Shown here: one piece after another, positions 45,671 through 48,811 of the stretch
Numbering within the stretch: the first letter of the stretch is position 1
How the letters are laid out: each line of letters starts with the position of its first letter
Sequence record: NC_029103.1
Length of the DNA: 64,000 nt
Reading direction: 5' to 3' (one strand)
Position numbers and translations under genes: made by a program
The notes under the pieces: model-generated
Databases searched by the model: none
What the model was told of the DNA's origin: nothing
The model's input: the letters and a program-made list of their open reading frames with translations, nothing else

Positions 45671-46430
45671 ATGAGAGTTGAACTTGTATCATATACAAAA
45701 GACGGAGAAAAGATAATTGCGATAGCCTCAAAGATGAGTAGGTCTAGGAAGGGTTGGGACTATCACTGGCAAAATATGACCGATGAAGAAATAGAGGAAT
45801 GGATAAGGGATGCAATAGTTCACGGATATTGGTCTGTGCTTGAACACAGTGTATACACTTTCTCGCTTGAAGGTATTTCAAGAGTAGCGTCACACCAATT
45901 GGTCAGGCACCGTATCGCTTCGTATACTCAAATGAGTCATCGCTTTGCAAAAACCAGTCGATGAATATTATCAGCCTGTTATACCGCCTTCTACTAAGAA
46001 TCGGGCTAGGCAAACTGTAGAGGAAGCGTATAGAGAAGCATATAACCACTATTATAAACTCCTAGAAGCTGGTGTACCTGAAGAAGATGCCCGTTACGTT
46101 TTACCGAACGGTGTCAACACGAACATTGTTGTGACCATGAACGCACGAGAACTTTACAACTTCTTTGCCCTGCGTTTGTGTTCAAGGACACAGTGGGAGA
46201 TACGTCAGGTGGCGTGGAAGATGCTCGAAGAAGTGAAGAAAGTACATCCTAGACTATTCCGTTATGCTGGGGCTAACTGTATTATCCACGAGAACTTTAT
46301 ACGTGACACGCCGATAACCCTAGACGAACTTAACGAGAAGACGGAGTTTATATCGATGCGTTGTATAGAAGGAGTCCCGAAAGAAGGGATTTATAAATGT
46401 ATACAAAACGCAAGAACTCGTTCTAGTTAA
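45671..46430 (+). CDS. thyX: Flavin-dependent thymidylate synthase (split by an extra A at about 45950)
   Basis: HWSVLEH and [11 protein letters not shown] (RHRx7S) motifs, LPNG...[12 protein letters not shown], and RLC.RTQWEIR. Confidence 0.93.
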
Positions 46431-46682: not shown

Positions 46683-47132
46683 TTAGTAGAATTCGGTATA
46701 ACTATAGTNCCTTTCCTTGTTACATATTATGTCGTCTCCCTTAATTTTCTCAATCTTATTGCAGAAAACGAACAGTATATTGTCACTCATGAAAGCCTTC
46801 ACATTCTCTGAAGTGATCCTAAGTTCAATAGGAATAACTGTATTGTTCTCTTCGAGTACTAAGCCACAAAACACTACACATTTATCTTTATCTTCATCCC
46901 TGAAAAGGTGCAGTGAAATTAGTATACGTGGGTTTTCAGAGAAGGGAATATCTCCAAAGTATACTATTGCCGGGGTACCCTCTNCAGTCTCTCTAACGAA
47001 AGGTATGCGTAAGCCTAGATTATTTATTGCTACCCTGAGTTCGTCCGGATTTTCAGTATTGNNAAAACTAAATTTCATTTCTATCAGACCCCAATACAAT
47101 CTCTTCATTTGATTTTCTTTTAAAGCCAACAA
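46683..47132 (-). CDS. Hypothetical protein
   Basis: ~140-aa ORF. Confidence 0.5.
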   Translation of the reverse strand: MLALKENQMKRLYWGLIEMKFSFXNTENPDELRVAINNLGLRIPFVRETXEGTPAIVYFGDIPFSENPRILISLHLFRDEDKDKCVVFCGLVLEENNTVIPIELRITSENVKAFMSDNILFVFCNKIEKIKGDDIICNKERXYSYTEFY

Positions 47133-47577: not shown

Positions 47578-48624
47578 CTATGATGAATGCGTCAACCGTA
47601 TCTTGAAACTGTGAACGCGGGGATGTTTAAACACCAGAGTCCTCAGGACATTGTATGTAAGCTTTTTGACATGCCTCTCTTTTCTGTATGTATACTCTAC
47701 AATAAAGCGACCAAAACCTATTTTGTAGTCTTGTTGTTTTTTCTTTTTCTTCTCTTCTGACTTAGATTTTGCATCAAACTTCGGAAAAGCCTCATAAACC
47801 TCTCTTGCCTCTTTCCTACGTTGTTTTTTCTTTTTCTTCTCTTCTGACTTAGATTTTGCATCAAACTTCGGAAAAGCCTCATAAACCTCTCTTGCCTCTT
47901 TCCTGCGGTTGTCTCTTAGGAGAAGCAGTATTACTGCTATTTTGATAACGTGTATATTATTGATTTTTGAGAACTTATCAAGTAGATTTAGGTAGCCGTA
48001 CTTATGCAGAAGATTGTATTTGTACTCTTCTATGAACTTTCTGCGTATTTCTGCTTTCGCTTTTATTTCAGCTTCTGATAAATACAGTTTATGATTTAAA
48101 ATATAATTCAAATTCTTTATCGTATTGGATAGTTTTTGTCTTGCGTTATCCTCATCGTCCTGAGTGAAATTCAGAATAATTGGTATGACAGAGTCAAATT
48201 CAACGTTACAGTACTTTATAGCAAAAGCACCGATGATATACAGCTTTCCTCTTATTTTGTTGTTGGCAATTACTTTTTCTGCAATTGTTGTAAAGAGAGC
48301 TTTTTGTGTAGAATTTGTAATTAAAATAGATAGTCTATACGCGAACGTATAGTAATTTTGTTTTCTTTCAAAAAACTTTGTAGGAAGAGTACCAATACCT
48401 CGGTTTGGTAAGAGAGCGTAATGGTGTTGGTAATGAGAATAGAGTTTATCGGCTTTAGATTCTTTTTCTAGTCCTTCCGTGTTAGTAACTAAAAACATGT
48501 CGTAGTCATAGTCAATAACTTCCCCCGTATCCGCACAGACGGTGTAGATACCGTCTGTGATGATTTCTTTACAATTGTCTGTTTGAGTTAGACTGATTTG
48601 GTTATGAACGATAGCTTCTGTCAT
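47578..48624 (-). CDS. Divergent TFB/TFIIB-like protein
   Basis: Ribbon-like C...VCADTGEVI, reader-like LLPNRGIGT and cyclin-like KIRGK...GAFAIKYC in TFB order. Confidence 0.55.
   Translation of the reverse strand: MTEAIVHNQISLTQTDNCKEIITDGIYTVCADTGEVIDYDYDMFLVTNTEGLEKESKADKLYSHYQHHYALLPNRGIGTLPTKFFERKQNYYTFAYRLSILITNSTQKALFTTIAEKVIANNKIRGKLYIIGAFAIKYCNVEFDSVIPIILNFTQDDEDNARQKLSNTIKNLNYILNHKLYLSEAEIKAKAEIRRKFIEEYKYNLLHKYGYLNLLDKFSKINNIHVIKIAVILLLLRDNRRKEAREVYEAFPKFDAKSKSEEKKKKKQRRKEAREVYEAFPKFDAKSKSEEKKKKKQQDYKIGFGRFIVEYTYRKERHVKKLTYNVLRTLVFKHPRVHSFKIRLTHSS
47734..47904. repeat. Near-perfect 87-bp tandem duplication (29 aa) inside the TFB-like gene
   Basis: RRKEAREVYEAFPKFDAKSKSEEKKKKKQ occurs twice. 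Confidence 0.95.
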
Positions 48625-48811
48625 ACTGAGTCTCAGTCATAAACAGCTGTTTAAAAATATTTAACACCATTAACAGGGTAGTATCCTTGACAAAACAAAC
48701 GGCAAGCATAGCCCCTTCTAGGGGAGGACGTCAGACGGAGCTAATTATCCTTGAGAAAGAATACAAGAAGATGATGAGGAAAAAAGGCAGGGTAAAAATT
48801 AATTTGATTTA

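What the first reader, a model, noticed from the sequence alone, without database searches (positions are those of the whole stretch)
47578..48624. Virus-encoded divergent TFB-like factor
Seen: three TFB-like signatures in the right order and spacing. These are a degenerate zinc ribbon (NCKEIITDGIYTVCADTGEVI, only two Cys), a B-reader-like LLPNRGIGT (compare LHDKGLST) and a first-cyclin-like KIRGKLYIIGAFAIKYC (compare LIRGRS...AAAIYAAC). The C-terminus is replaced by a Lys-rich region. Established: Sulfolobales use a truncated paralog, TFB3, as a transcription activator. Inference: a viral TFB mimic could redirect or block host RNA polymerase. It carries operator 1 over its own TATA box (48641), which links it to the regulon.
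Basis: partly seen in the sequence, partly recalled or inferred. Interest (0 to 1): 0.68.

Follow-up and report, generated by a model that had tools for sequence, protein, structure and literature searches.

The report
Hidden TFB-like factor in SMV viruses
This hot-spring archaeal virus carries a much-changed, so far unrecognised copy of its host's basic transcription start factor TFB, which probably lets it interfere with the host's RNA polymerase; this is not yet tested.

Summary
The window is Sulfolobus monocaudavirus SMV3. The ORF at 47578-48624 (-) is gp61 (ALG96998.1, 348 aa), annotated as hypothetical.

Independent tests support a TFB/TFIIB relationship:
- The N-terminus carries the non-canonical two-Cys B-ribbon of Sulfolobales TFB1/TFB2. 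In 41 host-phylum genomes that motif occurred only in TFB genes.
- Profile-profile comparison with a family of annotated viral TFBs gives P=1.6e-4 over ribbon, linker and first cyclin repeat. None of 180 shuffles reached the score.
- Language-model features of each half point to PF08271 and PF00382.

The protein is not an orthodox TFB. The B-reader (GPEWR) and the BRE-reading last helix are missing. A variable Lys-rich insert (tandemly duplicated in SMV3) and a conserved basic beta-beta-alpha-beta tail take their place.

The palindrome at 48641-48652 is real, specific to the SMV viruses tested, and abuts the TATA box.

Binding to RNA polymerase or TBP, and the function, remain untested. Viral TFBs are already annotated in other archaeal viruses, so this is a new variant of a known kind. 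The scan had already noted this stretch from an overlapping window of the same genome.

The parts
47578..48624 (-). gp61 (ALG96998.1), 348 aa; TFB-derived protein, core gene of SMV1-4
   Evidence: ORF and record annotation. Matches phrog_19561, function unknown. 55 homologues, none with a Pfam hit. Homologues are present in SMV1, SMV2 and SMV4.
48505..48579 (-). Residues 16-40: non-canonical two-Cys B-ribbon (C18-x11-C30-A-D-T-G-E-V-I)
   Evidence: Host TFB1/TFB2 read C-x15-C-[ST]-E-T-G-E-V-I. hhalign aligns the ribbons, P=0.014. The motif occurs only in TFB genes in 41 genomes. ESM features of residues 1-85 point to PF08271. The model shows three short strands at 21-39, but pLDDT is only about 50.
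48388..48414 (-). Residues 71-79, LLPNRGIGT: linker motif resembling TFB HDxGLST
   Evidence: P73 and T79 are invariant and G76 nearly so. hhalign places the motif opposite the HD-x-G-L-S-T position of host and viral TFBs. The model is of low confidence here.
48085..48372 (-). Residues 85-180: first cyclin-like repeat (five helices plus a linker helix)
47860..48084 (-). Residues 181-255: second, shortened cyclin-like repeat lacking the last (BRE-reading) helix
47725..47859 (-). Residues 256-300: Lys-rich insert restricted to the SMV3-like clade
   Evidence: Missing from SMV1, SMV2 and SMV4 and from most homologues. pLDDT about 40-60.
47733..47912 (.). In-frame 87-bp tandem duplication (2.1 copies, 97% alike) = residues 240-268 and 269-297
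   Evidence: Tandem Repeats Finder and the translation. In two viromes the contigs break at the repeat. Repeat-unit contigs have word depth 1600 against 810-1010 in the flanks. A 99% identical 348-aa protein lies on another contig.
47581..47724 (-). Residues 301-348: conserved basic C-terminal beta-beta-alpha-beta domain, fold unassigned
   Evidence: pLDDT about 79-93 with elements E307-313, E316-321, H324-332 and E336-342. Conserved in all homologues. A truncated second copy in SMV4 keeps this domain.
48641..48652 (.). A-box palindrome AAACAGCTGTTT, 16 nt upstream of the gp61 ATG
   Evidence: 33 copies in the window against 0.29 expected. Conserved at the promoters of the SMV1 and SMV4 homologues. 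SMV1 has 25, SMV4 30 and SMV2 11 copies; SYV1 and ARV2 have none.
48653..48664 (-). T/A-rich box TTAAATATTTTT; with the first As of the A-box it reads TTTTTAAA, a likely TATA box for a leaderless transcript
   Evidence: Read directly from the sequence and aligned with SMV1, SMV2 and SMV4. The role as TATA box is inferred from its position about 26-30 nt before the ATG. No transcript data exist.

Best explanation
gp61 descends from a Sulfolobales-type transcription factor B, probably captured from a host or from another virus.

It keeps the non-canonical two-Cys B-ribbon, which in TFB/TFIIB docks the factor on RNA polymerase. It also keeps a two-repeat cyclin core, which in TFB sits on TBP and TATA DNA. 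It has lost the B-reader, needed for start-site choice and opening, and the last helix that reads the BRE. It has gained a basic C-terminal domain.

The most likely mode of action is that gp61 enters or competes for host pre-initiation complexes and so reprogrammes initiation in infected cells. It would act either as an alternative or auxiliary initiation factor at viral promoters or as a competitor of TFB1/TFB2.

Shown here by computation: the homology and the domain layout. Inferred: binding to RNA polymerase and TBP. Unresolved: whether the effect is activation or inhibition.
For: - Ribbon: gp61 reads C18-x11-C30-A-D-T-G-E-V-I; host TFB1/TFB2 read C-x15-C-[ST]-E-T-G-E-V-I. Feng et al. 2018 (PMC6101594) describe Sulfolobus TFB1 as non-canonical, with two Cys and the fourth Cys changed to Thr.
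- Motif specificity: C-x-[DE]-T-G-E-V had 4 hits in 41 genomes, all at TFB ribbons.
- Profile comparison: hhalign of the gp61 family against 12 viral TFB-like proteins that carry PF08271 and PF00382 gave probability 50%, P=1.6e-4, over 103 columns (gp61 residues 24-138).
- Nulls for that score of 39.1: reversed alignment 15.0; column shuffles mean 15.2, maximum 29.7 (0 of 120 reached it); reversed-block shuffles maximum 21.3 (0 of 60).
- Fold, full model: the ten best Foldseek PDB hits are all TFIIB/Brf chains, though weak (E 0.13-0.8).
- Fold, BFVD: after the protein's own family come viral TFIIBs, including the SSRV1 TFB.
- ESM features: residues 1-85 point to Zn_Ribbon_TF (50 of 100 hits, score 0.91); residues 86-256 point to the TFIIB repeat (10 of the 10 best named hits).
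- Distribution: conserved in SMV1-4 and about 55 metagenomic relatives. The SMV1 homologue gp46 is not among the abundant virion proteins listed in PMC12199143.
Against: - No standard HMM sees the relationship: NCBIfam gives no hit, the NF001658 scan of the genome is negative, the PDB profile search is empty and there are no precomputed Pfam hits.
- hhalign against host TFBs alone aligns only the ribbon (P=0.014).
- The ribbon and linker are modelled with low confidence.
- The TFB-invariant residues P46, W48, R49 and the V288-Y294 helix have no counterpart.
- There is no expression or binding evidence.
Confidence: 0.6

Rival explanations
1. Decoy or inhibitor. gp61 uses its ribbon, its core, or both only to sequester host RNA polymerase or TBP. 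This would shut down host (or late viral) transcription, as ATV RIP/ORF145 does by another route.
For: gp61 lacks the B-reader and the BRE-reading helix that a productive TFB needs. Sulfolobales spindle-shaped viruses do encode RNA polymerase repressors: ATV, a bicaudavirus, encodes RIP/ORF145 (PMC5123050, PMC8448823, abstracts).
Against: A conserved, basic extra C-terminal domain and a conserved second repeat are more than a simple decoy needs. From memory, natural TFB paralogues with poorly conserved B-readers, such as P. furiosus TFB2, still initiate.
Confidence: 0.2
2. The TFB/cyclin fold has been reused outside transcription. Possible roles are an Orc6-like part in viral replication or manipulation of the host cell cycle. 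This would fit the neighbouring genes: the aCcr1 homologue gp63 and the ZapB-like gp62.
Against: The ribbon that docks on RNA polymerase is retained, and with the TFB-specific motif. TFIIB/TFB fit over both repeats better than Orc6 does. The gene neighbourhood is not conserved in function across SMV1, SMV2 and SMV4.
Confidence: 0.1
3. gp61 is not a TFB relative: it is an SMV-specific helical protein whose resemblance is convergent or due to chance.
For: Sequence identity at aligned positions is only 8-13%. Z stays at or below 8, and the tool notes warn that helical models reach such values without kinship. The HH probability is only 50%.
Against: Four largely independent signals agree on the same family and on the same domain order. 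By the reversed-pattern rate, the ribbon motif has about a 1e-6 chance of arising in frame in the first 40 codons.
Confidence: 0.08

Closest known systems
Sulfolobales non-canonical TFB1/TFB2 (host general initiation factors)
   Same: Two-Cys ribbon with Thr at the fourth-Cys position and G-E-V after it; a G-x-x-T linker motif; an R-G-[RK] ... A-x-x-I-x-Y-x-C helix in repeat 1; two cyclin-like repeats in the same order.
   Different: The ribbon hairpin is 4 residues shorter. There is no GPEWR B-reader and no C-terminal helix-turn-helix recognition helix. gp61 has an extra Lys-rich insert and a beta-beta-alpha-beta tail. NF001658 gives no HMM-level match.
Annotated TFB homologues of other archaeal viruses (rudiviruses MRV1, ARV2, ARV3, SSRV1; SYV1, SYV2; Halorubrum tailed viruses)
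   Same: They are virus-encoded TFB-family proteins of Sulfolobales viruses with the same T-E-T-G-E-V ribbon. They are the best profile match to gp61 (P=1.6e-4).
   Different: They are recognisable by BLAST and Pfam (28-36% identical to host TFB1). They keep the W-R B-reader and the last helix. gp61 does neither and was annotated as hypothetical. In the papers searched I found none of these viral TFBs functionally characterised.
TFB3 (truncated, UV-induced TFB paralogue of Sulfolobales)
   Same: It is a TFB relative lacking the DNA-reading C-terminal helix-turn-helix. It acts as an accessory factor with TBP and TFB1 rather than as a stand-alone initiation factor (PMC6101594).
   Different: TFB3 has a canonical four-Cys ribbon, which is essential for its function, and a coiled coil in place of cyclin repeats; it is about 170-200 aa long. 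gp61 has the two-Cys ribbon and keeps the cyclin core.
ATV ORF145/RIP
   Same: It is a protein of a Sulfolobales spindle-shaped virus (ATV, a bicaudavirus) that targets host RNA polymerase directly (PMC5123050).
   Different: It has an unrelated fold and binds inside the DNA channel. This is an analogy of function only, and gp61's function is untested.
Cyclins, Rb pocket and Orc6 (cyclin-fold superfamily)
   Different: They match over one repeat only and have no B-ribbon. Sulfolobales have no CDKs, according to the preprint abstract listed.

Membership tests
TFB/TFIIB family | N-terminal B-ribbon (PF08271): four Cys, or the two-Cys non-canonical form of Sulfolobales TFB1 | tested here: met
   gp61 reads C18-x11-C30-A-D-T-G-E-V-I; the host reads C-x15-C-[ST]-E-T-G-E-V-I. 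hhalign gives P=0.014. The motif is TFB-exclusive in 41 genomes. ESM features point to PF08271. Zinc binding itself cannot be tested here.
TFB/TFIIB family | B-reader with the conserved G-P-E-W-R | tested here: not met
   P46, W48 and R49 are invariant in 22 TFBs. gp61 has no W or R in the corresponding residues 41-60. The family conserves N48, E50, G51, H64 and Y65 instead.
TFB/TFIIB family | Linker motif H-D-x-G-L-S-T before the core | tested here: inconclusive
   L-L-P-N-x-G-I-G-T, with invariant P73 and T79 and nearly invariant G76, aligns to it at low per-column confidence.
TFB/TFIIB family | Two cyclin-like repeats (PF00382 twice) | tested here: met
TFB/TFIIB family | C-terminal helix-turn-helix recognition helix that reads the BRE (V-T-x-x-T-x-R-N-R-Y) | tested here: not met
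   V288, T289, R291, N292, R293 and Y294 are invariant in TFBs. In gp61 the structural alignment stops at P. woesei TFB chain residue 1281 of 1d3u_B. In gp61 the insert and a beta-beta-alpha-beta domain follow from residue 256.
TFB/TFIIB family | Binds TBP-TATA DNA and recruits RNA polymerase | not testable with these tools
   The single complex prediction (core + TBP_SACS2) gave no answer. Biochemistry is needed.
TFB3-type truncated TFB | Canonical four-Cys ribbon plus a C-terminal coiled coil, no cyclin core | tested here: not met
   TFB3-like ORFs of three Sulfolobales genomes carry C-x2-C ... C-x2-C and are 172-203 aa long. gp61 has two Cys and a cyclin core.
Anti-defence gene set of Bhoobalan-Chitty et al. 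2024 (promoter-motif based) | Listed as an ADG of SMV3 | tested here: not met
   Part 4 of Supplementary file 3 lists gp46, gp48, gp62, gp69 and gp71, and gp47 appears in part 2. That makes 6 of the 8 SMV3 entries seen; gp61 is not among them. ALG96998 does not occur in any supplement, though the table may use YP_ accessions.

The most novel reading that the evidence does not exclude
gp61 may be a virus-specific initiation factor in which the new basic C-terminal domain replaces BRE reading and instead recognises the SMV-specific A-box (AAACAGCTGTTT).

The A-box abuts TATA boxes at many SMV promoters. It lies just upstream of the TATA, in the BRE position, at gp53-56. It lies just downstream, overlapping the TATA, at gp61 itself and at gp3, gp9, gp23, gp65 and gp72.

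That would be a sigma-like promoter-class switch in an archaeal virus. At its own promoter gp61 could shut itself off or reverse the polarity of the complex.
Probability: 0.12. Interest if true: 0.85.

Novelty: new variant of a known kind. Interest (0 to 1): 0.62.

Why it matters
Archaeal viruses are generally thought to rely on host TBP and TFB (the 2017 review PMC5569661 says so). In the papers I could search I found none of the few annotated viral TFBs studied functionally.

gp61 shows that a whole group of spindle-shaped viruses (SMV1-4 and about 55 metagenomic relatives) carries a TFB derivative too diverged for routine annotation. It has a natural 'dissection' of TFB functions: the ribbon and core are kept, while the B-reader and BRE reader are lost.

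It gives a concrete, testable handle on how these chronic viruses reprogramme host RNA polymerase. It may also bear on what the abundant A-box promoter element does, and on which TFB modules suffice for recruitment and which for opening.

Tried and rejected
- Sequence searches that found nothing beyond the family: NCBIfam, single-sequence and profile searches of the PDB, and an hmmsearch of 1.84 billion representatives. The last gave only 4 clusters, including the distant singleton P0058, which has no relatives and lies on a 1.6-kb contig.
- The NF001658 scan of the SMV3 genome was negative.
- No proviral copies were found in 185,579 species genomes.
- Foldseek on the core-domain model and the shape search of the ESM Atlas (TM about 0.25, unrelated folds) were uninformative.
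- hhalign -glob gave trivial end alignments. Plain block shuffles are a poor null because they keep the local matches intact, so I replaced them with column and reversed-block shuffles.
- Complex prediction of gp61 residues 66-256 with S. solfataricus TBP returned 'no answer' (score 0.00). This counts neither for nor against binding.
- No RNA runs hold the locus, so expression and the transcript start are unknown.
- The supplements of the SMV1a transcriptome paper are not held, so the temporal class of the homologue gp46 could not be read.
- I rejected a TFB3-like architecture and membership of the published SMV3 anti-defence gene list.
- An 11-bp inverted repeat inside the ribbon-coding DNA (48534-48559) is not conserved in SMV1, SMV2 or SMV4, so I dismissed it as incidental.

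Full report
**Identity of the locus.** The window is Sulfolobus monocaudavirus SMV3 (KP282677/NC_029103; window coordinate = record coordinate minus 323). The ORF at 47578-48624 (-) is the 61st annotated CDS, ALG96998.1, 'hypothetical protein', 348 aa. It matches only phrog_19561, of unknown function. It has no NCBIfam hit and no PDB sequence hit.

Homologues are present in SMV1 (gp46, CDF81366), SMV2 and SMV4 at 39-50% identity. A further 55 or so cluster representatives come from Sulfolobales hot-spring metagenomes, none with a Pfam domain. An exhaustive HMM search of 1.84 billion representatives added only one distant singleton, P0058. The family is therefore narrow and specific to the SMV group.

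**Check of the observation.** They coincide with the most conserved positions of the family. C30, G34, E35, V36, P73, T79, K127, A133, F134 and Y138 are invariant, and C18 and G76 nearly so.

The account of the C-terminus needs correcting.
- Residues 181-255 are helical and conserved.
- The Lys-rich stretch is an insert confined to the SMV3-like clade.
- In SMV3 the insert is doubled by an in-frame 87-bp tandem repeat at 47733-47912.
- A conserved basic tail (301-348) follows in every homologue.

In two independent viromes the contigs break at the repeat. The repeat-unit contigs have about twice the word depth of the flanks (1600 against 810-1010). This agrees with two copies.

**The ribbon.** I fetched TFBs from Sulfolobales and other Thermoproteota genomes with NCBIfam NF001658. 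Sulfolobales TFB1 and TFB2 read C-x15-C-[ST]-E-T-G-E-V-I-E. This is the known 'non-canonical' two-Cys ribbon, in which the fourth Cys is a Thr (Feng et al. 2018, PMC6101594).

gp61 reads C18-x11-C30-A-D-T-G-E-V-I-D. It keeps the same two Cys, the same Thr and the same G-E-V. A DNA pattern encoding C-x-[DE]-T-G-E-V found four sites in 41 genomes, and all four lie inside TFB-family matches at the ribbon. The reversed control pattern found five sites. The chance of such a site arising in frame within the first 40 codons of a given gene is therefore of the order of 1e-6. hhalign of the gp61 family against host TFBs aligns exactly this region (P=0.014).

**Profile evidence beyond the ribbon.** TFB homologues are already annotated in other archaeal viruses: SYV1, SYV2, ARV2, ARV3, MRV1, SSRV1 and Halorubrum tailed viruses (Baquero et al. 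preprint). A family of 12 such proteins, all carrying PF08271 and PF00382, matches the gp61 family with probability 50% and P=1.6e-4. The match is one colinear stretch of 103 columns. It runs from the ribbon through LLPNRGIGT (placed opposite the HD-x-G motif) to residue 138 in the first repeat.

| Comparison with the viral TFB profile | hhalign score |
|---|---|
| Observed | 39.1 |
| Reversed alignment | 15.0 |
| 120 column shuffles | mean 15.2, maximum 29.7 |
| 60 reversed-block shuffles | maximum 21.3 |

None of the 180 shuffles reached the observed score. With a greedier alignment setting the register continues through both repeats. K-I-R-G-K...A-F-A-I-K-Y-C then lies on L-V-R-G-R-S...A-A-S-I-Y-A-S-C, and A-V-I-L-L-L-L-R-D-N-R-R lies on A-A-I-Y-I-A-A-L-L-N-D-E-R-R. 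The per-column confidence there is low.

**Fold evidence.** The full-length AlphaFold2 model has a mean pLDDT of 72.7, and 86-96 for residues 85-255.
- Its ten best Foldseek PDB hits are all TFIIB or Brf chains, though weak (E 0.13-0.8).
- In BFVD, after the protein's own family, the next hits are viral TFIIBs, including the SSRV1 TFB.
- The Foldseek-independent VIA search lists cyclin-fold proteins almost exclusively among its top 36.

A second model of residues 66-256 alone has a pLDDT of 82.

|---|---|---|---|
| Brf1 | 8.0 | 154 | 79 |
| TFIIB (7ena_BA) | 7.5 | 157 | 108 |
| P. woesei TFB core (1d3u_B) | 7.4 (rmsd 4.9) | 157 | 108 |
| Cyclins | about 6-7 | about 100, one repeat only | 79, 108 |

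**Language-model evidence.** ESM Atlas feature searches give leads only, not proof.

| Query | Nearest named families |
|---|---|
| Whole protein | PF08271/PF00382 clusters, scores 0.85-0.89 |
| Residues 1-85 | Zn_Ribbon_TF in 50 of 100 hits, score 0.91 |
| Residues 86-256 | TFIIB repeat in 10 of the 10 best named hits; also ORC6 and BRF2 |

**What is missing.** The TFB-invariant B-reader residues (P46, W48, R49) and the C-terminal recognition helix (V288-Y294) have no counterpart. gp61 is therefore a TFB derivative, not an orthodox initiation factor.

It is also not TFB3-like. TFB3 keeps four Cys, which are essential for its function, and replaces the core by a coiled coil.

**Promoter and A-box.** The perfect palindrome AAACAGCTGTTT at 48641-48652 lies 16 nt upstream of the ATG. 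It directly follows TTAAATATTTTT on the coding strand, so that TTTTTAAA is formed across the junction. That spacing would fit a leaderless transcript, but this is inferred, as no RNA data exist. The arrangement is conserved at the promoters of the SMV1 and SMV4 homologues and half-conserved in SMV2.

The window has 33 copies with at most 1 mismatch, against 0.29 expected. Of these, 22 are intergenic. They fall into three positional classes:
- 9-16 nt before a start codon: gp3, gp9, gp23, gp61, gp65 and gp72.
- 40-68 nt before a start codon, upstream of the TATA: among others gp53-56.
- After gene 3' ends.

SMV1 has 25 copies, SMV4 30 and SMV2 11. SYV1 and ARV2, which carry orthodox viral TFBs, have none. 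The 'regulon' link is thus real as a sequence fact. What binds the A-box is unknown, and a palindrome more usually points to a dimeric repressor.

gp61 is not among the six of the eight SMV3 entries I saw in the published anti-defence gene table.

**Mechanism.** From established knowledge of TFB/TFIIB, the ribbon docks on RNA polymerase, the core binds TBP-DNA, and the B-reader and linker drive opening and start-site selection.

A protein with ribbon and core but no B-reader or BRE reader should still enter or compete for pre-initiation complexes. It would not act as a normal TFB. I therefore favour a role in reprogramming initiation (confidence 0.6 for engagement with the transcription machinery). 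Whether it activates or inhibits is open.

The rival readings are a pure decoy (0.2), reuse of the fold outside transcription (0.1), and no kinship at all (0.08). The single complex prediction with TBP gave no answer, so it is listed only under Tried and rejected.

**Novelty.** Virus-encoded TFBs are known as annotations. I found no paper naming the SMV protein as one, and no functional study of any archaeal viral TFB, in the library searched. This is a new, strongly derived variant of a known kind.

The scan had already noted this same stretch from an overlapping window of the same genome.

Noticed in passing
window 47733-47912: An in-frame 87-bp tandem duplication (29 aa twice) duplicates the last helix of repeat 2 plus the Lys-rich spacer. 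Contigs of two viromes break here, with about double depth for the repeat unit. In SMV1a a different gene (gp41) carries a reversibly expanding repeat called 'Sader' (PMC12199143), so repeat expansion may be a general habit of SMV viruses.
   Followed up: partly
window, 33 sites (e.g. 5757, 22257, 32618, 42238, 43542, 48641, 50509, 52350, 53266, 54023, 54529): The A-box AAACAGCTGTTT is mostly intergenic (22 of 33 sites). It sits in three positions: 9-16 nt before a start codon, 40-68 nt before one (upstream of the TATA), or just after gene 3' ends. It is abundant in SMV1 (25), SMV4 (30) and SMV2 (11) and absent from SYV1 and ARV2. Its binder is unknown.
   Followed up: partly
SMV4 record KP282678 41650-42034 (locus L062): About 1.2 kb downstream of the full-length gene lies a truncated, frame-broken second copy of the C-terminal half of the gp61 homologue (matches residues 169-256 and 299-344). 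Its 92-aa ORF ALG97075.1 is probably the 91-aa BFVD entry that matched the model.
   Followed up: partly
window 45671-46430: The thyX gene is annotated as two overlapping ORFs (45671-45964 and 45945-46430), which suggests a frameshift or a sequencing error. Runs of N give X residues in the neighbouring gp60 (46683-47132).
   Followed up: no
locus L003 (Logan contig of SRR6344961), 363-1328: P0058 (321 aa) is the only distant relative of the family (E 6e-6). It keeps C-x11-C-E-E-N-G-E-V-L and L-P-N-x-W-I-G-T, so these two motifs are the oldest conserved parts. It has no relatives of its own in 5.8 billion proteins.
   Followed up: partly
loci L049 and L050 (SYV1, SYV2): The annotated TFBs of SYV1 and SYV2 have lost even the third Cys of the ribbon (they read D-T-E-T-G-E-V). 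They carry a C-terminal extension with a C-P-R-C-G zinc-ribbon-like motif. This is another example of viral TFBs remodelling their C-terminus.
   Followed up: no
window 48534-48559: A perfect 11-bp inverted repeat lies inside the DNA that codes for the ribbon. It is not conserved in SMV1, SMV2 or SMV4, so it is probably incidental.
   Followed up: yes
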